From NCBI GenBank assembly GCA_964035545.1, contig OZ037765.1:22629504-22693503 (forward strand): a stretch of 64,000 nt of DNA. The letters run 5' to 3'. The stretch comes from Bugula neritina. Lineage: Eukaryota; Animalia; Bryozoa. The first letter of the stretch is position 1. Every line of letters starts with the position of its first letter. This document shows, in pieces, positions 3,832 through 54,889 of this stretch. A program made the translations under genes and the position numbers. Below the pieces are notes generated by a model that saw only the letters and a list, made by a program, of their open reading frames with translations, was not told where the DNA came from and ran no database searches.

Positions 3832-6800
3832 ATGATGCACTACCCAGGGATTGATCCTTCGGCTCCTTATGGCTCGCACTCTCCTAATGTCACAGTCATG
3901 AACAGAGGGCCAACTGCAGCAGCCATGCAAGCAGCTGCCTGGTCACAGAACCCTACCAGCTGCCGCTACAATCCGGCAGTAGCAGCAGACTACATGGCGA
4001 ATTCGGCAGCAAGCTTTGCTGCTGACTCGGTCAATTTCTACCAGGACTCTTATAGACACCCTCTAATACCTGGTAGCTCAGCAATGCCAAGTATGTATTA
4101 CCCACCACATCCAATGTTGATGCAGAACAGAAATATAGCTGCACCAGGAGAATTAAATGTGGTAAATAGCTCTTCACCAACACCCACCAGCACAGCTCAA
4201 CCACCTGCAGAACTTGCCTCACCAACTGATAGCTTAGGCTCCAAAGGTTTGTTATATTTTACCAAGTCCGTTATACGTACATTTCACTTACATTTTTATG
4301 CCATACATGATACATGTTTGTTGTATTACTGCACTCGATATGAATACATATCCTACATATCAGTATCACGAGTGCTTTAATACAAAAGTGCTGCATATAG
4401 TACATAATTATGATATTTATCCTGTCCATTGTAATTGTTACAACTTCAATACAACACTTGCAAAGTGTAAAATGTATTTTTCAAGTACCAAAGTTGGTAA
4501 CACGAAATGTTGATCATTCAAAATTTCCGCTGAGTTAAAACATGAAGTCTATTAGTATTTCAATTTGTTTGAGTTTTAGTATTTTACTTGAAAAGAAAAA
4601 CAAGCTTTGAAGACAAGTGTCAAAAATTAATTTCATATCTAAAGCCACTAAAGCCAGTTTGAGTTTGAGTTTCATAAAAAAAGTCAACTAGTATACAGCA
4701 TTAGTACACCATACTTATAGTTATAAAAATTGCTTGGTGCCGTCCCCTACTTAAAACTTTTTCTCACTCCAGCTCATCATAGTTGAGTATCAAAACCTAA
4801 GCAGGTGGATAGCAACTTATACAAAGAATGCCTGATCCGGTCAATTCGTGGTTTCTAATTATTTATTAAGTATGGGTTTATTCTCAACATTAGCTCTTAG
4901 ATTATCTTACATGAAACACAAATCTCAGTTAAATTTGTGAGCAAGGCATGATTAGGTTTTTGTCAAAGGAGATTTTGTGTAAAAGTCGCAGTATGATTTT
5001 GCAATTGAACAAAGTTTAAAAAAATAAAATTCAAGTTCTATTTTCTGTTAAAGGAGATTGCATAATACACACCACTTCATTCAGAATTTGATTTACTGCA
5101 TGATTAAAAGCAAATCTAATGAATTTTCCAAATAGACAATAATTTTGTATATAGTTTATAGAACAATAAATTCAAGCAGGTGAACAAAGCCGGGCGGGCC
5201 TGAGAGAAATGCCTAAACTTATATATGCTACAAAGTTGCAGCATAGACTTGGGTAACCAACACAATTGCATAATGCCCCTTACTTACTACTAGTGCACAG
5301 CATTTAACTTTTATTAGATTATGTAAAGCGGCAATGATTGCATAATATTTTGGCAGTGTTTGCTATTAATCAAACATTTTTTATAATAAACAAGCAATGT
5401 CAAAGGCAGTTTGTTCATTGTACTATCTAATATACAAGTCTAGAATAGGCCAAATTAGCCAGTAAAATTGAAAAACACTAATAGCGTCTTATTAGTAAGA
5501 AGTTCACCCTGATTTTTATATCTCTTAACTGTAGATACTATCTAAACATGGATTAATTTTTTAATCTAAATTTCTTAAAACAGCTAATTGTTCTAAACTG
5601 TCAGTTAATGGGTACAGTATGGAGACAGAGTACAGCTTTGATATGCAGATAAACCACCTTGTCAGTTGTCAACTTATGACTGAGCATGCCTGCCTGCCCT
5701 TCTATTTAACAACAACCATTAGTTAGTTCTTGTAAGAGGGAGGGAGACGAAGCTACTTCCGGAATTAGTTAGGACTTATGTTCTCATCAATATCATTTCT
5801 TAGATTTTGCTTTCAAATAAAGCATGCAGTTTAATTAGTTTAGTTCTGTTATAGTATGTTAAATTTGGCACTCTAATTTCATAATTGCATAAGTCCTGAA
5901 ATGTTTTGAAGATTTCAACAACTCTCTTTGGTTTTGAAACGTTGAGTCAGCTCAGCTACGTTAAGCTTTTCCAGCACAACTAGCTACATTGCTTACTAAA
6001 TTGATCAGATCAGATCATGTTTTGTCAAGTCATATTGATTACAGTGACAATAAAACATAAATTAAAATTTAAATTTATCTTTCAATAACTTCAGAATTGA
6101 TATTTTTATGATACTTTTTTTCTTATTGATAAGATGGTTGTGCCAGAAAACTGTTTTACTGCAGTAACTTTTACATTAACTATATAGCCAACAAAAATAT
6201 TACGCAGACAAAATTTAATTATGTTCATCTATGTAACTTAGACATAATATGGCAATTTAACCACTTATTAGACATATCACTATTAAATATATTAGCATTC
6301 TTATAATCTACTTTTCAATAATTTATACTTTTATTCAACTTCTCACCAAGCTAAAAGACAATAAATACTTTAATGAATTTGAAAAGTGCTCTGGTAATTG
6401 GTAAGCTGTTATTAAGTAGGATGCAAACACATCTCGGAAGGTCTCATTGCACCGGAAGTTAACTTGATATTATATCGCTGTAATTTGCTAATAGACACTA
6501 AGTAATATTTTTAATGAATGATACTTTATATAAATAATTTCTAAAGAATAAAAATAATGCTGTCTTTGCTAGCACCTGTGATGAATAGCAATTTTATGGC
6601 ATTAAGTTGATGATTGTCATTAATAGTTTCCCCGAATATAAGTAAGATAAATTATTAGGATTAATAAAACTTGTTATTTACTCAATATTTATAGGCCTAC
6701 ATTAGATTCTTGTGCTGAATTCTCAGCTTTCACATTTTGAATTGAAGTATGTACACTTTTCAAAAAGTTTTGCGGGACTTGTGTTCGGCTATACAGATAT

Positions 6801-7293
6801 GTAAATAGTTTACAAACTTGTTTAGCAGAGTGCAAGAGAAGTTCCCAGCTTCTATAGAGCTTATGGGTGTACTCAATGTTTTGATTATTATTATACTTTT
6901 GTAGAAGCTGAAAACAGCTCTACTGGGACAAATGGCTCAGGTTCTTCTAGAAAAAAGCGGAAGCCCTATACTCGCTATCAAACTATGGTACTAGAAACAG
7001 AATTTATCAACAACTCGTATATAACACGACAGAAAAGATGGGAAATCTCATGTAGACTACGATTAACTGAAAGACAAGTGAAAGTTTGGTTTCAAAATAG
7101 ACGGATGAAGCGCAAAAAGTTGAATGATAGAGCTAAAAATGCTCAATTGGCTGTTCAACACACACCATCCTTGGCTCATCACGTGACAGTTGCCCTACCA
7201 TATCATCATAGTGGGCAGGCTTTACAGTGCCATGGTAACAATGAAGGTGCTACTGCAGCAGCATTAGGTCTTTGTTATGCTAAATCTAGTTGA
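3832..7293 (+). CDS. Post2: Posterior Hox protein Post2; join(3832..4246,6905..7293), ~267 aa
   Basis: Homeodomain [58 protein letters not shown] is diagnostic of spiralian Post2. Donor AAG|GTTTGT after 4246 and acceptor TTTTGTAG| before 6905 are both phase 1 and join in frame. Exon 1 is Pro/Ala/Tyr/Ser-rich. Start ATG less certain (possible 5'UTR intron ending at 3813). AATAAA at 7819-7824. Confidence 0.93.
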
Positions 7294-11361: not shown

Positions 11362-11481
<120 letters not shown>

Positions 11482-11489
11482 TATTAATG

Positions 11490-11564
11490 ATTTTATTTCC
11501 CACTACAGCTTCGTAATTGCTACACTAAAAACTTTGTGCTGCTATGCTATATATATAAATATAA

Positions 11565-11606
<42 letters not shown>

Positions 11607-11663
11607 CATAGCAGCACAAAGTTTTTAGTGTAGCAATTACGAAGCTGTAGTGGGAAATAAAAT
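11490..11663. repeat. Perfect inverted repeat, ~68-bp arms around a TA-rich spacer
   Basis: ATTTTATTTCCCACTACAGCTTCGTAATTGCTACACTAAAAACTTTGTGCTGCTATGCTATATATATA (11490-11557) is the exact reverse complement of ~11596-11663. Confidence 0.95.
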
Positions 11664-12565
11664 TATTTATATCTACATTAAAGGGAAATTTAATATTGGT
11701 TTGAAGCTTATTTCATGCAGAAAATTTTGCTCACCTTCACCTTTCAAGCTGTATTTTTTTGTAAAGCCTGTGATAAAAGGTAGAACAATCTCAATAACAA
11801 AGTAACTCGCTCACCCAGAAAATTCATGTTGAACAAATCTCAACACCGTTGCATATACATGCAAGAACTGTTTAAGCTTTGCTATCAGTGATTTACTTTA
11901 GAATATCAGCAACTTTCATCACGATGAGCTATCTACCCAACATGTCCCACTTGTAGAGTAAATTTAATTTTAAAAATTGAGTTGCTATTCCTGAAATTAG
12001 TTTCAATTATTTTCCAACAATGTCTCAAAGACTATGTTATAGTTTCTTTTCAAAGACCTCAAACATATTTATTGATTCAAGCTTTGTTTATTAATAATTA
12101 ATTTAAAATTATACAATGCATTATTACTGTGTATTCTGAATATACACAAAGTCCGTTTTGAGTCACATAAACCCTTTATTTTCTGATGACTTACATTTGA
12201 TACAGTTAGGATAGAATATAAACTAATGGCCAATAAGTTTTTTAAATAGTCACACTAAAAAAATCATTTACCAAACACCTTTCATGAAACTAAAGAACAA
12301 AACTCCACTTTTACAGAGTTGGTTTGATTAGCAGTAGCTACTACAAACAATGAATTGAAATTATAGTCATATAGTTGTATTTAAATGGCTACAAAGTTCA
12401 TTACATAAACGCAATATAAATATGAACGAGAGGTAATAACTCCTACTTCAGTAAATCAATAATAGGTTGATTATAAATGTAACACAGGTAACTGAACAAT
12501 TCCTTGAACAGAGCACAAAGTAATATAATTTAGAACAACATAGCTTAATAAAATGACGAATTTCG

Positions 12566-15500
12566 TCATCCGGTGTACAAATCTTTTGGCTTCTCTGGAA
12601 GCGCTGGTTGACTTTCTATAGTCTCTGAAACCAAAGACATAATCCTGGATTTCAAACGAATGCTATCAAGTTGAGAGAGCTGACGGAAGATAGGTGGTAA
12701 CTGCATTGCGAAATGGTAATGTTCGTCCTCAATTTCTCTCGGCTTTGACACACACTTCACAACGTCTGCTATTAAAGAGAGTGATTGCACAACTCCCTCT
12801 GGTGTTGGAATACTCTGATCCTGAGTGTTGAGTTCTATTGGGGGCACACTAGAGGTTATGTTATCTGAATGTTGAGTGGGTTGACTAGGAGAAGCAAGAG
12901 TGGCAGGTGAAGGGAAACACGAAAGCTGTGCTGAGGATGCGGGTGAAAGGGATAAAGGAGGCAATGAGTCATCCATAACGGGAGAAGATGGAGATCTCCT
13001 AATTGTAAAGCTGGCTTTTCTCCTGAAACAATATTTATATGATTAATTATATTAAGTTTGTTTTTTCATAGACTAGTGCCTTCAAAAATATTATTCAAAA
13101 CTCAATTGATAAACTCAATTAAAATTTTAAAATATTAGTCATCACATCAGCTTATTTTTTATCATAAGTTTTCTCCCTCAAGTACCATAATAATTGCAGT
13201 GTCTGTCTCAATTTTTCATGTTGTGAAAAGGCAAAAAAAACAAAAAGTTTTTAAAAATACTCCAGTTAAAATAGTCTTGAATCTTCTATAATATAAACTT
13301 CCTACAACTAAGTATAAATGTTACAACATTTTATGCTAAGTCTGTTAATATTTTACTATGAATCACATGAAGTTATTTATTAATTTAGTTTTCTCAAAGT
13401 CTATAATTACGCATGACAATCACCCATATAAAATGCTTCTTTCCATGTATAAGCAAAATATACTGTCTATAAATACATAAATAAAATATTATAAACAACA
13501 AGTCAAACTTTTCGACTCAAAATAACATATTAAGATGTATAGTATTTGGTCAGTCTTAGTTGCAGTTAATTTTTAAACGATGTAGATGTAGATGTAACAA
13601 CAACTGCTGATATGTCAGAAGGAAACTGTAAATTATGAGCTGTACGCAAAGTTTTAATTTTTCAACAAAAAACATCATGTTTCACTATGGGGGAATAACT
13701 CTGCAATACTGATCCATAACTAAAGAGAGAACAAAATTAGTACACTACCTAGTTAACTTTGGGCAGTAGCGACTATACCACTGCATGTTCTCCCAATATG
13801 GCCAGCTGGGAGTGGTCATTTTAATTTCACTTCTTCGGTTTCTTAACATTGTCCGTTTGACGGCAGTAAAGCGATCTCGTAAAGATCGCCATCGCTCTGG
13901 ACAGGGAGTTTCTAAAATTTGTCAATACTAGTTTTAGTTAGCATGCAAATAATTTTGTAAAAAAATTAATACTTGCTATGAATATGTTAAGAGACAAATT
14001 TACATTTGCTGAAATTCTGAATAATGAAAAGACATGATTAAATAAAATAGTACTTTTTACATTTAAATTTAAATAAATAACCGAACCCAAGTTATAAATG
14101 ACTGAAAGCTTCATTAAAAGTCAAAACTAAAAGCTCTAATTAATGCTTGTAGTGATGGAAATAAATAAAATTAAAACTTAAGACCTAAAGTTACTTACAA
14201 TCAGCAAAATTAAAATGATAAAATATTCCAGTGGTATACTCATAGACACATAATGGTACAAAAACAAAATATGAACGAAAATAAAGGTACAGTAAAGCTA
14301 AGAGCTTCTCCCCTCACTTCATAAGAAATGTGGGATACAAAATCAATATAAATATGAACTATGTTGCTAGCATAGAAAATGTTGAGCTGCTGATATCATG
14401 AATAAAACACAGTCCTTAAAACATATTTACACACTAAACTGTGAAAATTACAGTTACGTATTACACATCTGTGTACTAAACATTATAGTTAAGCAAGTGG
14501 ATTACACATTTTTACTAGTTTAGATGACAAAAGAGTGTTTAAAGTAGAATGTGTCCGATAAAATTAAAGTGTTTTACATGATTCACCAGCTTTTTCTTGT
14601 ACTAAGCACAAAAAACTTAAGTTATCATGCTGGTTTTGTCATCAAAAATAAACAGCTAGTAAAATATAACAAAATAAATGCTTTAGTACAACAATTCATA
14701 TGATTCCTACTATAAAATAATGAGTAACTTTGTTAACTAAAATAGTTTAATGGTATAAAATAAAAGTAATCATAATGACCAGCTGAAACCTAGATAAGGA
14801 ATAACCTATGGTATAAATAGAGTAGAAGTAGAGTTGAAAAAGTTTTAATAATGCTAGCAAATAATAGTAGTATTAAAATATTGATATTTGTAAAACAAAG
14901 TCATCGTACTCTAAATTACAGCAATAGTTAACTACTCAAGTAAAATAAAAATATATAATTTTCCACCCAACATTTATAATGCGTCCCGATTAAAGCACTA
15001 AAATATGCATATATTGAAGTTCATGAGACAGCGGAAGCTATAACTATCATTATGATAACGATGATGTTGACAATTATGATTTATCTACTTCTAGCAATAG
15101 GTATTATCATCAATTGACTAAACTATTTTTTATAAATAACTAAAATAAAATTACAAAACAAAATAACTCACATAAAATTACATAATAAATATGAAGAGAG
15201 CGCAATCACACATCAGTCATTACATCAAAATAATGTATAATAATTAGTATAAATATCATTTACTGTTTAAAATATATTTATATAATCATATTTATAGTGA
15301 TAGTCATACATATATAATATTTTTTGCATTATGACTACCAAGCAGAATGAGTGTAAGTTTCCTTCAATAAAAACATAAATTATTAAATAATATTATCATT
15401 AAATATTAATAACTAAATATATATTATGATAATAAAAATAACAGTTTGTAACTTAGGTAAAGCTAATAAAACTAAACGAGTAATTCACTTAATTAGCTAA

Positions 15501-15957
15501 TACCAATAGTAATACTAATTATAATGGCAAGGGTTTAATAACAATAGTAATAGTGATAATTATACATAATACAAGAATAGTCACTAGTGGTACTTTTGAA
15601 TTAAACTAAAACATAAAGTTAAACTAATACTGTCAAACAGCTCAAACTGAAACTTCCAATTTTAAATTTAATGAACTACAGTGAGTACTTATTTGTTATT
15701 TGAATTGCTTATAGTTAAATTGTTAAAATACTGCTATTTCAGTTTTCAATAAAAAAATTGAAAAAAGAAGAAATACCATTAGGTAAAGGTGGGTACCGCT
15801 CCTCTACTTTATTGGTAATTTCAGCCCAAATTTTAGGTCTCGTAACTTTTGTATCCCTGTAATCAACATGAGCAGGATCATATAAGGCTGGATACTCTTT
15901 AACGAGAGAAATAAGTAGTTGAGTTCTTCCAGCGGTGTTATTTGAGAAATCTGTCAT
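12566..15957 (-). CDS. MADF (Myb/SANT-like) + BESS-like domain protein; complement(join(12566..13022,13749..13911,15777..15957)), ~266 aa
   Basis: Exon 1 LISLVKEYPALYDPAHVDYRD..KIWAEI and exon 2 (not in ORF track) CPERWRSLRDRF...WPYWENMQW form a MADF pattern. Exon 3 has a Ser/Pro linker and DEHYHFAMQLPPIFRQLSQLDSIRLKSRIMSLV (BESS-like). All junctions GT-AG with matching phases (1, 2); total 801 nt, no internal stop. Confidence 0.85.
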
Positions 15958-17492
15958 GCTTTTAATGTCATTAGACCTGGCTTAAAGTTAGTGAGCTTGA
16001 CATTTTAAAACTTTGCTTGCAACTTGGGCTTATAACATAATTTACGGGAAATGAGTTATTAATGCTATTAATGGAAAAGAGCGCTTCAAAGTTTCCTAGA
16101 ACGGAGCTGTGGCAATCAGGTAATAAAAGTTGTTTTCTCTTGCTTTAATTAATTGTTGAGAGGACAATCTTTAAAATAGACATCTCATTAAAATGGTATC
16201 AGGGAGCTTGCGTATTAATTTGTGTGCTGTGCAGCTGCTGTTGGAGGGTTTGTCCCCTTGTCAGCACAGAATATAGTACCATGGTCAACACTTTTGCAAT
16301 AGAAAAAACATATGTTTCTACTAAACCACATTTAAAAGGTGTGCATGTAAACTCAAGCCAAAGACCTCACGTAATTCTAGGAGCCCACCACAATGAGTTT
16401 ATGGTCATAGTTAGAGAGCCCTATATTCATATTATAATGTATTTTAGTTATAATCTACAGACTTCTTCAGGGTTGTATAATGTTCAAACAATTTTGTTTT
16501 ATAATAAACTTCGTGCTCATGCTGACTTGAAGTTTCTGTTGGGTTTTGAAGTACCCAATAATATCAAAACTACAGTCTTCAAGCCTTTAAGACTGCACTT
16601 GTTATATTACATAAGCTGCACTAGAATATCACAGCTTAAAAAATATTTGTATGCTAATTGTAGCTCTTTATAAACACCACCCTATAATCAACTAACCCAG
16701 CGACAAAATATTTTACCAGCTATGAAACATATATTACCGTATTTTATTATTCAGCTCGTAGGCTAATCAATATATAAGTTTTTACATGTTTTTCCCAGTT
16801 GAATGGTAATCATTTTATTATAAGCTCTCTAACGTATTCCTGCATTGTGGTTGGTTCACACTGTGAAACCTGATTTAAAATCTGCTGAGTATGAAAAGTC
16901 ATGTTTAGTCGCCTACATCTAGGTTATTGCTGAAGTGGGTAACAACTTCTCGACCCTCCAGATCACTGTGTTTTCAGTTTATCAGCTGCTATAAAGGAAA
17001 TTTGGCTTTATTATTAATAAAATGCTGCAGGAAATATTCTGTTTCTTAATAATCAAACCACCAATAATAGGCATCATAGCTGAACTCCAGTTAAGTTTTA
17101 TTTCTATTAGGAAAAGCTGGAATCTGAATACTAGAAAGCAACCTCAGTGCTTAACCAATCAATATGTAGTTGTCAATTTTTTTATTAGTTTGCAGTTTTA
17201 GTTGCTTTTCTTAGTATCATGTATTAAAATTTATAATAAATCTATTTCATTATACTATCACTTTGGTAATTAGGCCAAACAAAATATGAATTGTTTCACC
17301 TTGTGTGATTAGAGGTCTCACGATACAACTGTAACCTAACTGTTGAGAGCATGATTGACTACACCACTGATCAAAGCAAGTTAGTACTTAGTAGTATAAC
17401 AGAAGGTCTTCAACTTGCTAAGGGCTATATACTAGTATGGTGTTTCTGACTTGGTGAATACCAGGGCTAGGACTAGGACTAGCATCCAGACT

Positions 17493-17877
17493 GGCCTGGC
17501 TTCGGCTCGCGTGAATCACACAAAACTCGTGTGACGATTTTCGTGTGTTATCCTCTTGTTATGACCAGCCACACACTCGTCAGACGAAACACATAATAAA
17601 AGTCTGTGAATGAGTCTTGCACGACATACAAACAGCAGAAAATTGCCAAAAAAGATAAACGTGGTAGAAATAAAATAACTACTGTTGCTAAAATTATATT
17701 GACCAATCAAATGGTGCTTATAGTTAATTGCGATTTTTTTTTTTTTTGTCCATCGTCTTCGTTGGGTGCACCCAACGAAGACGATTTTGTTTAAATTCCC
17801 GCAAATTTGATTGTACGTTTGTGTTTTCGTGTCAAATAGATGGTTTTGTGTGATTCTCACGAGTGTGAGGCCAGGCC
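17493..17877. mobile_element. MITE, probably PIF/Harbinger-like
   Basis: Imperfect TIRs: left GGCCTGGCTTCGGCTCGCGTGAATCACACAAAAC; right (rev-comp) GGCCTGGCCTCACACTCGTGAGAATCACACAAAAC. Right flank TTA, left TSD not preserved. CpG-richer than surroundings; no coding capacity. Confidence 0.7.
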
Positions 17878-19181
17878 TTAAGACAGGACCAGTTACAGAG
17901 CTAGTACCAGAGTTAGTGCCCACTTATAAAATGCCATTTTCTTCTGCGAATGCAGACAAAATCTAAATAATTTGAATTATTGCCTAGACATGTATATTCA
18001 TTACTCAAATATTATGTAAGTGCAGTAATTGAAAAAGGTTCTGTTGTAGATGATAAATTAGCAAAAGCAGTTAAATGATCTTGTAAGAATTTCGTGAAGA
18101 TAAATGAAAAACATAGGCTAATAACTACCAAACAGATATTTTGGAAGTAGTCCTAATGGTTTATAGCTTTGTAGCCGTAGAACTAAGACTAAAGAAGAAA
18201 CTATCATCTGCCTGGAAGTTTGGCCAGCTTAAAAAGCTCAGGCTTCACAAGGAGTTTCAAGTAAAGCTAAATTAAAAGGAAGCAATAATCAATCTTAGTT
18301 CATTGTTACTGTCTTAAGCTATGTGAGTGTTAATATTTATAATTACAGTTATAAGCAAGTTTGTTTTTGACTATAACATATAAACACATTGTTGAGTGCT
18401 TACTATTACCGTTGCAGGTCTATAGTTGAGACACTGAACACAATGAATATATAAATAATTGTGAATTACAATAACAGAGAGTGCAGAGTTTAAACATCTG
18501 TTACATTTACACAAGGTAGTTATTTCAGAAAGTATTGTTTAAGAAATGTGTTATTATGGTATTATATGGTCATGTGGAGAATATTCTTGGTACCAGTCTT
18601 GGTCAGATTATAATTATAATAGTGGTGCAGCTCTTTAGTTCTTAAGCTGTGTTTAGCTAGACAACATCCTTTCTACCAACTCCTCTTCATAATAAAGCAG
18701 AACTCCTTCACCTTCAGCTATCCACAGAAAGGTATGCAAGCAATCTACTTCTTTATTCATCTTTTAAAATTGTTTTTATTTATTATTAATTAAGTTATTG
18801 CTGATTATAAGCTAGAAGCTATTGCAACTAATATTCACCTAGAGTACTAAAATTATTAATATAGCATTACTACTACTATTAGTTTCGGGCATTTCCAATG
18901 AACAAAAGTGTAAATATAACTATTAAAATAACCATATAGTTTATTACATGTTGATGTATACTAATACATATATATATTTTTTTTTTCTAATTTGCTTTTA
19001 CTCAACAATGATAACAAAATTAAATAAGAATTAGAAGTTCTACTTATATCTATCTGGTAATAAATTTAAAAATCTGAGTTTATGAATAACAGTGTCCTAT
19101 GCATTGTATTGTGTTATTTTATTTTTAGAAACCAACCTTCTGTTCAGAATTCAATTTATTACTCACATAGAACTAGATGAG

Positions 19182-50585: not shown

Positions 50586-50930
50586 GCCTAGGGCCACACG
50601 GTGCGTATTTTCGCATGCGAAAATTGAAATCACAAGTAGCAAAGGTGTCCACTGTGCGCGTTGAGAAAACATTCGCACTTGTCGCTCTGCATTTTCAACG
50701 CAAGTGCGAATCGTCTCTGTCGTCGTCACCTAATTGGCTAGTAGTTATTAAGCGAGCCCAATTTCTTTATTTTAGTGCTACATTCCAGTAAATTGCGTTT
50801 TATTGAAAGCGAGTGCGATTTAAAAATGAAAGCTTTATTCATCACGCGTCACTGACGCTACAGTGGACGCCTTTGCTACTTGTGATTTCAATTTTTCGCA
50901 TGCAAAAATACGCACCGTGTGGCCCGAGGC
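50586..50930. mobile_element. PIF/Harbinger (Tourist-like) MITE, 345 bp, TAA TSD
   Basis: ~70-bp near-perfect TIRs GCCT(A/C)GGGCCACACGGTGCGTATTTT..GCATGCGAAAATTGAAATCACAAGTAGCAAAGG(T/C)GTCCACTGT; TAA at both 50583-50585 and 50931-50933. Confidence 0.9.
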
Positions 50931-52586: not shown

Positions 52587-54889
52587 ATGAGTACATTTCT
52601 ATTAGGGCAAACTGAAGCATACAATGGCCCAAATGATGGCGTAATTGACTACAGCGTGTACAGCAATGGTCAAAGCAGAGCTACAGAAGATTTCTACAGA
52701 CAGCATTACGACAGCACTTACGTTTCAACAGCGAATGGCGAGCCATCTGCGGCCAGGTACTGGTATGACATTATAATAATTGGTTAGGCTGACATTAGTC
52801 ATGCGTTATTAACTTTATATCGTAAGCTAAGACAATTTGGTAAGAGATCTTGTAAAGATAACAGTACCCAATACTTTTCTTGTACTTCTCTCTTTGTAAT
52901 GACAAATATTGCACCCATTCACCCTACTTCAATGCTTAATATCTCACTTTCGGCTGTAAAATTTCCTAATCTTTTCTTTTACATCACACAGTCAATGGCG
53001 TCTTTCAAGTACTTAGGACTCAAGTGTTCAGTAGCATAGCAATTTGCTTACTAAGCTTATAAGATATGGGTTTCACATTCTTTCTGACCATGTTGCCCCG
53101 CTGCACCAACATATCTCTTTCAACAGCTACATTAAAGTAATGTATCATGTAGCATACAGACAAGATATACACACTTCACAGTATTTTTGAAGTTTTACTG
53201 TTGTGCATAAAACTACCCACAGTCGTCGCATAAGAGTTGACCAGAAGAACGTTAAAGCCTATCTTACAAGTTTCGTTCTACAAATGGGTGTTCTATATTT
53301 GGCTCTATAACCAATCAGGCATTACATATGCTATAACTGAAGGGTGCATCATAAGTGAGGCTGAAACTATATCAATGAAAAAAAAAAAATGGCAATCGCC
53401 TGCATAGAGAAATTTATGAGATCAACCCATTAGTTATTTTGGCCGAGTGATATTACTGTGTTCCTGCAGATACAATTAGCAGATACTACATAAAAAGTTG
53501 CGTTATGTTTTAGGAGTTTAAGAAAGGAACTTGCTGGAGAGATTTACAACTTCTATAGTCAACTCTAAGTTCCAGCCAAGCGAGATCAATCTAATGCGAT
53601 GATCATTTGTATTTTTCTGTGTGTTGTTTGCAGATACTCAAGCAATGGAGTTGATATTAACACATCCAACAGCAGTTACCCTCTGCATGGCTTACGGATG
53701 GACTACAGTAATTTAGCTATACCTTCATATCAGCCTCCTTTACCTCACAGCACCAGCCATCCTGAAACACCCTCCACTCCAACCAATGAGAATGACTCAA
53801 CCTTCACCGCATCAACTAACTCAGCTGTGCAGATCTATCCATGGATGAAAAAGTTACATGTTAGCTGTATGTACCAGATAACCAATGAAATTGTTTTAGA
53901 AGTAGTCAAATTGACTGTTAGCATACCCAACCTTATCTGTGGGTTTTGCTTAGAAATTAGTCTAGCATACATTTACCACACTAATGCTCGGAATTTGTTC
54001 TATGTTCTTTACAACATTGAAAAAGATATTTACAGATCCTGCTCATAACTTGCACTGACTAGTCATAGAATCTGTATACCCAGTTTCGGGCTCTAGATTT
54101 TTCTTAATTGAACAATTATATAACTATATTCATTACTAAGAAATGCTTTGATGTTATCAATGCATTGGTAATGCGTCAAAAACACTCCGAAATGGTGAAA
54201 TATAACATCTTAGTAAACGTAAGCATTCTAGAAAGGTTTAAACAAATGTGTGCTATATTGCTAGATGATATGATAGATAACCAAGTGCTTAGCCATTACG
54301 TTGCATAACCTCTCCTTGATCTGAGGTCTTGAGACAGTAAACACTTGACTACAAAGTGTTACCTTCATAGCACTAATTGCAACACTAACAACTAAAAGCT
54401 GATTTGCAGCTAATATTTTACTTAGTCCTGATACTGGAATAAAGTTAATGAAATGTGACATGAGTTTAATAAAATATCTAAGATTCCAACCTAGGAATGT
54501 GCAAAAGTATTGAGACTAAAAAAGCTTAAACAGTAAATTTTTGAAACAAGATTATAGTTGTGATTGGTTTACAATTTTGTTTTAATACAGCATCCAATGA
54601 CCCAGATGGCATGGATCCAAAGAGAGCCAGAACTGCCTACACTAGACACCAAATTTTAGAGCTAGAAAAAGAATTTCATTTCAACCGTTATCTCACAAGA
54701 CGCAGACGTATAGAGATTGCACACACTCTTGATCTCTCAGAAAGACAAATAAAGATCTGGTTTCAAAACCGTAGAATGAAATGGAAAAAAGAACACAAAT
54801 TACCAAATACAAAAGGTAAGATTCCAGAAATAAAGCCCCAAGAGTCAACATCTGGTGGATCAGAAAAGAGTTTGGATGATGAAGACTGA
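52587..54889 (+). CDS. Dfd: Hox4/Deformed; join(52587..52756,53634..53866,54591..54889), ~233 aa
   Basis: N-terminal MSTFLL (Hox4-type MSSFL), hexapeptide [10 protein letters not shown], homeodomain [60 protein letters not shown] plus the Hox4 signature LPNTK. GT-AG introns of phase 2 and 1 join to 702 nt in frame. AATAAA at 55350. Confidence 0.92.

What the first reader, a model, noticed from the sequence alone, without database searches (positions are those of the whole stretch)
12566..15957. Intact antisense MADF-BESS gene sitting where Lox2/Lox4/Antp should be
Seen: three phase-compatible exons give a 266-aa MADF + Ser/Pro linker + BESS-like protein, opposite in orientation to all Hox genes; the middle exon is invisible in the ORF track. 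Known: MADF-BESS proteins (Drosophila Adf1, Dip3, Stonewall) are chromatin/transcription regulators, Adf1 is linked to Polycomb response elements, and Myb/SANT-like MADF genes are carried by PIF/Harbinger transposons. Inference: a non-Hox chromatin regulator has been captured inside the cluster and may be co-regulated with it or separate the Post2 and Lox5 regulatory domains. Best candidate here for an undescribed system.
Basis: partly seen in the sequence, partly recalled or inferred. Interest (0 to 1): 0.8.

Follow-up and report, generated by a model that had tools for sequence, protein, structure and literature searches.

The report
Tamed transposon gene inside Hox cluster
A DNA-binding gene most likely taken from a jumping gene sits, intact, spliced and under purifying selection, between two body-plan (Hox) genes of the moss animal Bugula neritina, but nothing here shows that it regulates those Hox genes.

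Summary
Three exons on the minus strand (15957-15777, 13911-13749, 13022-12566) give a 266-aa protein: MADF domain, Ser/Pro linker, BESS-like tail (Pfam BESS not reached). The genome matches Bugula neritina tzBugNeri2.1.

A sibling lineage (Type S assembly, about 10% diverged) has the gene at the same place. A 973-nt contig from that lineage carries exactly both splice junctions, and dN/dS is 0.12 (p about 3e-9). The gene is single copy, with no transposase or terminal repeats nearby. Its closest exon-2 and exon-3 relatives are ORF2 genes of PIF/Harbinger transposons lying tail-to-tail with a transposase, and it shares intron phases with Harbinger ORF2 in this genome. Best reading: a domesticated Harbinger MADF gene, a known kind.

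The gap where Lox2/Lox4/Antp 'should be' is published lineage-wide loss: Antp and Lox2 in all bryozoans, Lox4 in Bugula and Bugulina. At least three similar orphan MADF genes lie elsewhere in the genome. Co-regulation or boundary function is untested, and conservation beyond the species complex was not found. I found no paper reporting this gene in the cluster. The scan noted one other MADF gene in this genome.

The parts
15777..15957 (-). Exon 1 coding part: start codon and MADF helices 1-2. The 5' untranslated part runs on to at least 16026; an in-frame stop lies 9 codons upstream of the ATG
13912..15776 (-). Intron 1, GT-AG, phase 1, inside the MADF domain; same place and phase as in Harbinger ORF2 genes of this genome
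13749..13911 (-). Exon 2: MADF recognition helix and the W..MQWY motif
13023..13748 (-). Intron 2, GT-AG, phase 2, just after the MADF domain
12566..13022 (-). Exon 3 coding part: Ser/Pro/Thr-rich disordered linker (48% S+P+T), BESS-like tail and stop. The 3' untranslated part runs to at least 12468; candidate AATAAA at 12180, 12092, 12073
12629..12727 (-). BESS-like helical hairpin starting DEHYHFAMQL, a motif shared with ORF2 of one Harbinger lineage
3832..7293 (+). Post2 (exons 3832-4246 and 6905-7293), the 3'-side neighbour, tail-to-tail, 5.3 kb between stop codons
32285..33572 (+). Lox5, the 5'-side Hox neighbour, head-to-head, about 16 kb away
53599..54889 (+). Dfd-a/Hox4a (approximate span from ORFs); pb follows just beyond the window at G000:C1:22695370

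Best explanation
The gene is a domesticated ORF2 of a PIF/Harbinger DNA transposon. A Harbinger element of the lineage whose ORF2 has the QWY and DEHYHFAMQL motifs landed between Post2 and Lox5 before the Plymouth and Type S lineages of Bugula neritina split. Its transposase and terminal repeats decayed beyond recognition, while the MADF gene kept its three-exon structure and has been held by host-level purifying selection. Shown: structure, splicing, single copy, orthologous position, selection, no transposase or TIRs, closest kin in Harbinger elements. Inferred: insertion at this very site rather than relocation. Inferred from the family: the protein is a nuclear, sequence-specific DNA binder (MADF trihelix) that dimerises or recruits partners through the BESS-like tail and works in trans as one of several MADF transcription or chromatin factors. 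Its place in the Hox cluster is most likely a tolerated accident of insertion in a reduced cluster that takes up Harbinger elements.
For: Spliced contig with both junctions. Collinear locus in GCA_010799875.2 at about 85-91% DNA identity, with Post2 next door. 24 synonymous against 11 non-synonymous changes, dN/dS 0.12, Fisher p 3e-9. dS 0.15 is close to intron divergence 0.10-0.12 and Post2 dS 0.10-0.13, as expected for vertical descent. Single copy by exon 2, exon 3 and single-copy contig depth. No DDE_Tnp_4 match within about 200 kb; no transposase remnant by tblastn with four transposases; no TIR of the two characterised families near the gene. Best exon-2 match (43%, E 4e-11) and exon-3 matches (E 2e-15 to 7e-11) are in contigs L081, L083, L084; L081 and L083 carry a convergent DDE_Tnp_4 transposase. 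An element of this layout is also in this genome at C1:6237438-6240001. Intron 1 (same offset, phase 1) and intron 2 (phase 2) match TIR- and TTA-bounded Harbinger family A. A family-A MITE sits in the same cluster at 50586-50930.
Against: Exon trees do not resolve the gene's sister group with support. Exon 1 is closest to a transposase-less paralogue on C5 (49%), so duplication from an already domesticated gene is possible. The phase-1 intron is shared by transposon and non-transposon MADF genes alike. Selection is shown only over about 10% divergence inside one species complex. No orthologue was found in other bryozoans. DNA binding and nuclear function were not tested.
Confidence: 0.62

Rival explanations
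1. It is a relocated duplicate of an older host MADF(-BESS) gene. The subfamily was domesticated once, earlier and elsewhere, and a DNA-level duplicate with introns moved into the cluster. It works as an ordinary trans-acting factor.
For: At least three other single-copy, transposase-less MADF genes (C5:9226156, C7:12601441, C6:2727633) share the intron phases and the M.W[YF]-type motif. The best exon-1 match is the C5 gene (49%).
Against: The BESS-like tail is much closer to transposon ORF2 (DEHYHFAMQL in L081, L083, L084) than to the C7 paralogue, whose tail groups with family A. Exon 3 finds no paralogue in the genome.
Confidence: 0.18
2. It is kept as a transposon controller. The protein binds sub-terminal motifs of Harbinger elements and MITEs and dampens or silences them, with no developmental role.
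For: Harbinger Myb-like proteins bind a 9-bp sub-terminal motif (PMC9710019). The genome has 113 DDE_Tnp_4 matches and two young MADF-carrying families at 93-99% identity. The same transposon lineage is still present.
Against: The protein is only 27-31% identical to the active families in exon 2, so it may not share their binding sites. An arms race would predict faster change than dN/dS 0.12. No binding data.
Confidence: 0.1
3. One reading: the gene was co-opted as part of the Hox cluster. It shares enhancers with Post2 or Lox5, or its locus or protein acts as a boundary or Polycomb-recruiting element between them, perhaps linked to the loss of Lox4.
For: Position and orientation are kept in two lineages. 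It occupies the interval that holds Lox4 in Membranipora (PMC10675955). Drosophila ADF1 is a PRE component (PMC4009610), CP60 sits at insulators (PMC10573801), and a fish Harbinger-derived ADF-1L is reported to regulate its neighbour in cis (PMC11893794).
Against: No expression-pattern or chromatin data. Sequence similarity upstream of the gene ends 240 bp from the ATG and the next 3.4 kb differ between the two lineages, which does not suggest a constrained regulatory block. No Lox4 remnant lies near it. It is no closer to Adf1-like proteins than to other MADF proteins (22-35%). Position shared by sibling species is the default expectation.
Confidence: 0.07
4. It is a neutral transposon relic whose frame has survived by chance.
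For: Transposon ancestry. The Type S assembly shows a 1-bp deletion in exon 3.
Against: The deletion is absent from four independent Type S-like contigs (L059, L060, L079, L080), so it is probably an assembly error. dN/dS is 0.12. Exons have no indels while introns have 11 and 23 gap openings. Variants in run X1 avoid the coding exons except one synonymous change.
Confidence: 0.03

Closest known systems
Domesticated PIF/Harbinger MADF genes of insects (DPM7, APM1/APM2, LPM2; PMC9710019)
   Same: Single copy, no TIRs, syntenic, purifying selection (their dN/dS 0.07-0.52, here 0.12), MADF domain from Harbinger gene 2.
   Different: Those were recognised next to a co-domesticated transposase and are conserved across genera. 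Here no transposase is adjacent, depth is shown only within one species complex, and the site is inside a Hox cluster.
ORF2 (Myb/SANT-like, MADF) of active PIF/Harbinger transposons, e.g. family A here (G000:C2:20194379-20198131) and contigs L081, L083
   Same: MADF + linker + BESS-like tail, three exons with phase-1 and phase-2 introns; the DEHYHFAMQL-type tail is shared with L081, L083 and L084.
   Different: No convergent transposase, no TIRs or TWA duplication, single copy, introns grown to 1.9 and 0.7 kb (intron 1 is about 95 nt in family A).
Drosophila MADF-BESS factors (Adf1, Dip3, Stonewall, CP60; PMC10573801)
   Same: Domain order and size; arthropod proteins named Adf-1-like align over the whole length.
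   Different: Only 22-35% identity, so no orthology. The Pfam BESS cut-off is not reached. No function was tested.
Fish ADF-1L (PMC11893794)
   Same: Harbinger-derived MADF gene proposed to act on a neighbouring gene.
   Different: Its neighbour is 7SL, not a Hox gene; cis action is untested here and no sequence comparison was made.
Cheilostome bryozoan Hox cluster (PMC10675955, PMC11789643)
   Same: Post2-Lox5-Dfda-pb on one chromosome, Dfdb on another; no Antp, Lox2, Scr or Lox4.
   Different: The passages I read do not mention a non-Hox gene inside the cluster.

Membership tests
MADF domain family (PF10545) | Score above the Pfam gathering cut-off over the whole trihelix | tested here: met
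   Exon 1 33.2 bits and exon 2 25.7 bits; P0004 61.7 bits over profile 1-83; helices modelled at pLDDT above 90
MADF-BESS proteins | C-terminal BESS motif above the PF02944 cut-off | tested here: not met
   No hit or 35
MADF-BESS proteins | C-terminal two-helix motif homologous to BESS | tested here: met
   Custom profile 23.6 bits against shuffle maximum 4.1 (seeds partly ascertained by this query); ESM Atlas 0.92; helices 215-252
MADF-BESS proteins | Dimerisation through BESS and sequence-specific DNA binding | not testable with these tools
   Needs biochemistry
Active PIF/Harbinger transposon | DDE_Tnp_4 transposase gene beside ORF2 | tested here: not met
   Nearest match about 200 kb away; no remnant by tblastn
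Active PIF/Harbinger transposon | Terminal inverted repeats and a 3-bp TWA duplication around the gene | tested here: not met
   None enclosing the gene; the same test finds them for families A and B
Active PIF/Harbinger transposon | Several near-identical dispersed copies | tested here: not met
   Exon 3 one match; next exon-2 match 38% or lower among significant hits; single-copy depth
Domesticated PIF/Harbinger gene (criteria of PMC9710019) | Homology to transposon ORF2 | tested here: met
   Closest exon-2 and exon-3 kin lie beside transposases; intron phases shared; tree support weak
Domesticated PIF/Harbinger gene (criteria of PMC9710019) | Single copy, no TIRs | tested here: met
Domesticated PIF/Harbinger gene (criteria of PMC9710019) | Purifying selection | tested here: met
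   dN/dS 0.12, p 3e-9, one pair of lineages
Domesticated PIF/Harbinger gene (criteria of PMC9710019) | Conserved synteny in close relatives | tested here: met
   GCA_010799875.2 collinear
Domesticated PIF/Harbinger gene (criteria of PMC9710019) | Conserved synteny in more distant genera | tested here: inconclusive
   Post2 contigs of four other probable bryozoans end at most 3.5 kb after Post2, short of the 5.3 kb needed; no orthologue in protein searches
Domesticated PIF/Harbinger gene (criteria of PMC9710019) | Transcription | tested here: met
   Intron-less contig with both junctions in SRR4125604; library type inferred, not read from metadata; no RNA run for the window's own lineage
Co-domesticated transposase + MADF pair | Intact domesticated transposase next to the MADF gene | tested here: not met
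Bugulid Hox cluster | Post2-Lox5-Dfda-pb linked, Dfdb elsewhere, no Antp/Lox2/Lox4/Scr | tested here: met
   PMC10675955 Table 1
Functional component of Hox regulation | Shared expression, binding in the cluster or boundary activity | not testable with these tools
   No RNA reads or chromatin data available

The most novel reading that the evidence does not exclude
A Harbinger insertion between Post2 and Lox5 coincided with the loss of Lox4 in Bugulidae, and its MADF gene was recruited into the cluster's own regulation, as a shared-enhancer passenger or as an Adf1-like Polycomb or boundary factor acting on the neighbouring Hox genes.
Probability: 0.07. Interest if true: 0.8.

Novelty: new member of a known kind. 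Interest (0 to 1): 0.4.

Why it matters
It is a well-supported case of a transposon gene turned host gene in a phylum for which my literature searches found none described. It lies inside a compact Hox cluster, in the interval from which Lox4 was lost. That gives a cheap comparative test with the many bryozoan genomes now being released: does the insertion date to the same branch as the Lox4 loss? If it does and expression follows Post2 or Lox5, it would link transposon capture to Hox cluster reduction. If not, it is one more domesticated MADF gene and shows that this cluster tolerates insertions. It also indicates that the truncated public model EB796_019290 (169 aa) probably rests on a 1-bp assembly error.

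Tried and rejected
The joined spliced model of the window was not searched. Exons were searched one by one by reference, and whole-protein steps used P0004, a natural database protein from the sibling lineage.

Pfam BESS: no hit. Foldseek against PDB: nothing significant; the Zeste DNA-binding domain appears only at E 8.5. Metagenome scan with P0004: no locus. Rfam: none. RNA runs for the window's own lineage: none served; the one run is DNA-like. Hox or Lox4 remnants between Post2 and Lox5 or between Lox5 and Dfd: none. Post2 contigs of other bryozoans: too short to test synteny. Exon trees: unresolved. Paper searches for the run accessions and for MADF + Hox cluster: nothing relevant.

The MITE at 17493-17888 was considered as a border of the ancestral element and rejected: it has its own two ends, at least 40 copies, and is absent from the Type S locus. 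A retrocopy explanation for the intron-less contig was rejected because the genome has one exon-3 match and the contig is 99-100% identical to the Type S genomic exons.

Full report
Observation. On the minus strand, exons 15957-15777 (181 nt), 13911-13749 (163 nt) and 13022-12566 (457 nt) add up to 266 codons plus a stop. The introns are GT-AG, in phases 1 and 2, and the exons are much richer in G+C than the introns. Pfam MADF is split cleanly over exon 1 (profile 1-40) and exon 2 (45-83), each above the cut-off. Exon 3 has no Pfam hit, and a genome-wide BESS search finds only another locus. Its last third is nevertheless BESS-like. It scores 23.6 bits on a profile of five Pfam-confirmed BESS motifs, against at most 4.1 for 1000 shuffles (four seeds were found with this protein as query). 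Its first ESM Atlas hit is a BESS cluster (0.92), and the model shows a confident helical hairpin after a disordered linker. Exons were searched by reference, and whole-protein steps used the natural database protein P0004.

Organism and Hox context. G000 has 216.0 Mb in 321 contigs, and its chromosome lengths match Bugula neritina tzBugNeri2.1 from Plymouth (PMC11480708). The window holds Post2, Lox5 and Dfd-a, pb follows just outside, and a second Dfd lies on C2. A search with the Lox5 homeodomain finds no other central Hox gene, and no Hox remnant lies in the interval. This is the published arrangement: Antp, Lox2 and Scr are missing in all bryozoans examined, and Lox4 is missing in B. neritina and Bugulina stolonifera but present in Membranipora (PMC10675955, PMC11789643). 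The missing genes are therefore no peculiarity of this locus. Only Lox4 could, in principle, have been lost near the time this gene arrived.

Orthologue, transcript and selection. Exon 3 finds one protein, EB796_019290 of the Type S assembly GCA_010799875.2 (Type S per PMC7576161). That contig is collinear with the window at about 85-91% identity over most of its 22.8 kb and has Post2 next to the gene. A run close to the window's own lineage differs at 5 sites over 715 nt where Type S differs at 44, so the two assemblies are distinct lineages. The protein's cluster holds a 266-aa member encoded without introns on a 973-nt contig of SRR4125604. It maps as 16026-15777, 13912-13748 and 13024-12468, with exactly the two predicted junctions. 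That the run is RNA is my inference from this structure. Exon by exon there are 24 synonymous and 11 non-synonymous differences: dS 0.148, dN 0.018, ratio 0.12, Fisher p 3e-9. Introns differ by 0.10-0.12 with many gaps, and Post2 has dS 0.10-0.13, so the two copies descend vertically from one locus and the selection acted after it was fixed there. The 1-bp deletion that truncates the NCBI model is absent from four other contigs and is probably an assembly error.

Origin. The genome has at least 32 MADF and 113 Harbinger-type transposase matches. Two multi-copy MADF families, 93-99% identical among copies, lie tail-to-tail with transposases and are bounded by inverted repeats with TTA or TAA duplications: ordinary Harbinger elements. 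The gene under study is single copy. It has no transposase within about 200 kb, no remnant of one, and no such ends. Yet its first intron falls at the same offset and phase, and its second in the same phase, as in Harbinger family A. A search of 1.84 billion representatives found no orthologue outside B. neritina (relatives above 50% identity could be hidden there, but the word searches found none). It did return proteins that share the tail motif DEHYHFAMQL or a close variant. Two of their three contigs carry a MADF gene followed by a convergent DDE_Tnp_4 transposase, and these contigs give the best matches for both exon 2 and exon 3. An element with this layout also exists in G000 at C1:6237438-6240001. 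Trees on single exons are too short to resolve the sister group. At least three other transposase-less single MADF genes exist (C5, C6, C7), one of which is the best exon-1 match, so relocation of an older host gene cannot be excluded.

How it most likely works. Shown: a spliced, selected, immobile gene with a MADF trihelix and a BESS-like tail. From the family: Harbinger Myb-like proteins bind DNA and enter the nucleus without the transposase (PMC9710019), and BESS directs dimerisation and partner binding (PMC10573801). Inferred: a trans-acting DNA-binding factor, one of several, kept for a host function (about 0.8 when direct domestication and relocation are added together). A role in restraining Harbinger elements is possible (about 0.1). 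A role in Hox regulation has precedent only by analogy (ADF1 at PREs, PMC4009610; cis-acting ADF-1L, PMC11893794) and no support here. The DNA more than 240 bp upstream of the ATG is not conserved between the two lineages, and the cluster accepts other Harbinger-type insertions, such as a family-A MITE at 50586-50930. I put that reading at about 0.07.

Novelty and verdict. By the criteria used for insects (single copy, no TIRs, synteny, purifying selection; PMC9710019) the gene qualifies as domesticated, with the limit that synteny is shown only inside the species complex. Post2 contigs of four other probable bryozoans were too short to extend the test. It fails the tests for an active transposon and for a co-domesticated pair. 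My paper searches found no report of this gene or of a MADF gene in a bryozoan Hox cluster. From my own knowledge, non-Hox genes inside Hox clusters are known in other animals, for example in the Drosophila Antennapedia complex. Verdict: a real and well-supported new member of a known kind, in an unusual place. Interest 0.4; it would rise to about 0.8 if comparative genomes tied it to the loss of Lox4 and expression tied it to Post2 or Lox5.

Noticed in passing
window:50583-50933: 345-bp Harbinger MITE between Lox5 and Dfd, with the terminal repeats of autonomous family A (G000:C2:20194379-20198131) and TAA duplications on both sides.
   Followed up: partly
window:17493-17888: About 395-bp MITE with GGCC-starting ends and an internal palindrome, at least 40 copies at 84-88% identity, absent from the Type S locus; 1.5 kb upstream of the MADF gene.
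   Followed up: partly
window:19747-20235: Second open frame in the Post2-Lox5 interval, + strand, with 33-nt repeats and a helical tail. The frame is kept in Type S (called there as a 128-aa gene) but dN/dS is about 0.7; only a weak ASNSD1-SEP match below cut-off. A conserved donor-like site near 16121 could make it a divergent partner of the MADF promoter (untested).
   Followed up: partly
window:5534-5652: About 120-bp non-coding element in the Post2 intron, 83% identical in another probable bryozoan (L076:476-597) whose Post2 exon is only 72% identical at DNA level; contains TAAT cores; candidate enhancer.
   Followed up: partly
window:2325-28710 against L058: The Plymouth reference and the Virginia Type S assembly, both named Bugula neritina, differ by about 10% here, far more than run X1 differs from the window. 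The UK reference may be a different cryptic type from Type S.
   Followed up: partly
window:16227-16381: Fragment of a high-copy repeat that elsewhere forms 272-bp tandem arrays flanked by (TA)n runs; depth about 45 times single copy.
   Followed up: no
window:11481-11672: Perfectly palindromic element with (TA)n centre, 0.9 kb downstream of the gene; absent from Type S, where the alignment skips 11373-12006.
   Followed up: no
L061:7128-7330, L066:4400-7296, L063:6124-6771: Three more single-copy, transposase-less MADF genes with the same intron phases (C5, C7, C6); the C5 gene has a 7-kb first intron holding a LINE-like fragment. Further candidate domestications.
   Followed up: partly
L058:12706: 1-bp deletion in the GCA_010799875.2 assembly that truncates the model EB796_019290 to 169 aa; absent from four other contigs.
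   Followed up: yes
L052:4210-4857: A minus-strand exon that looks like Seipin/BSCL2 (recalled resemblance, not tested) lies about 1 kb after the pb stop and closes the cluster on that side.
   Followed up: no
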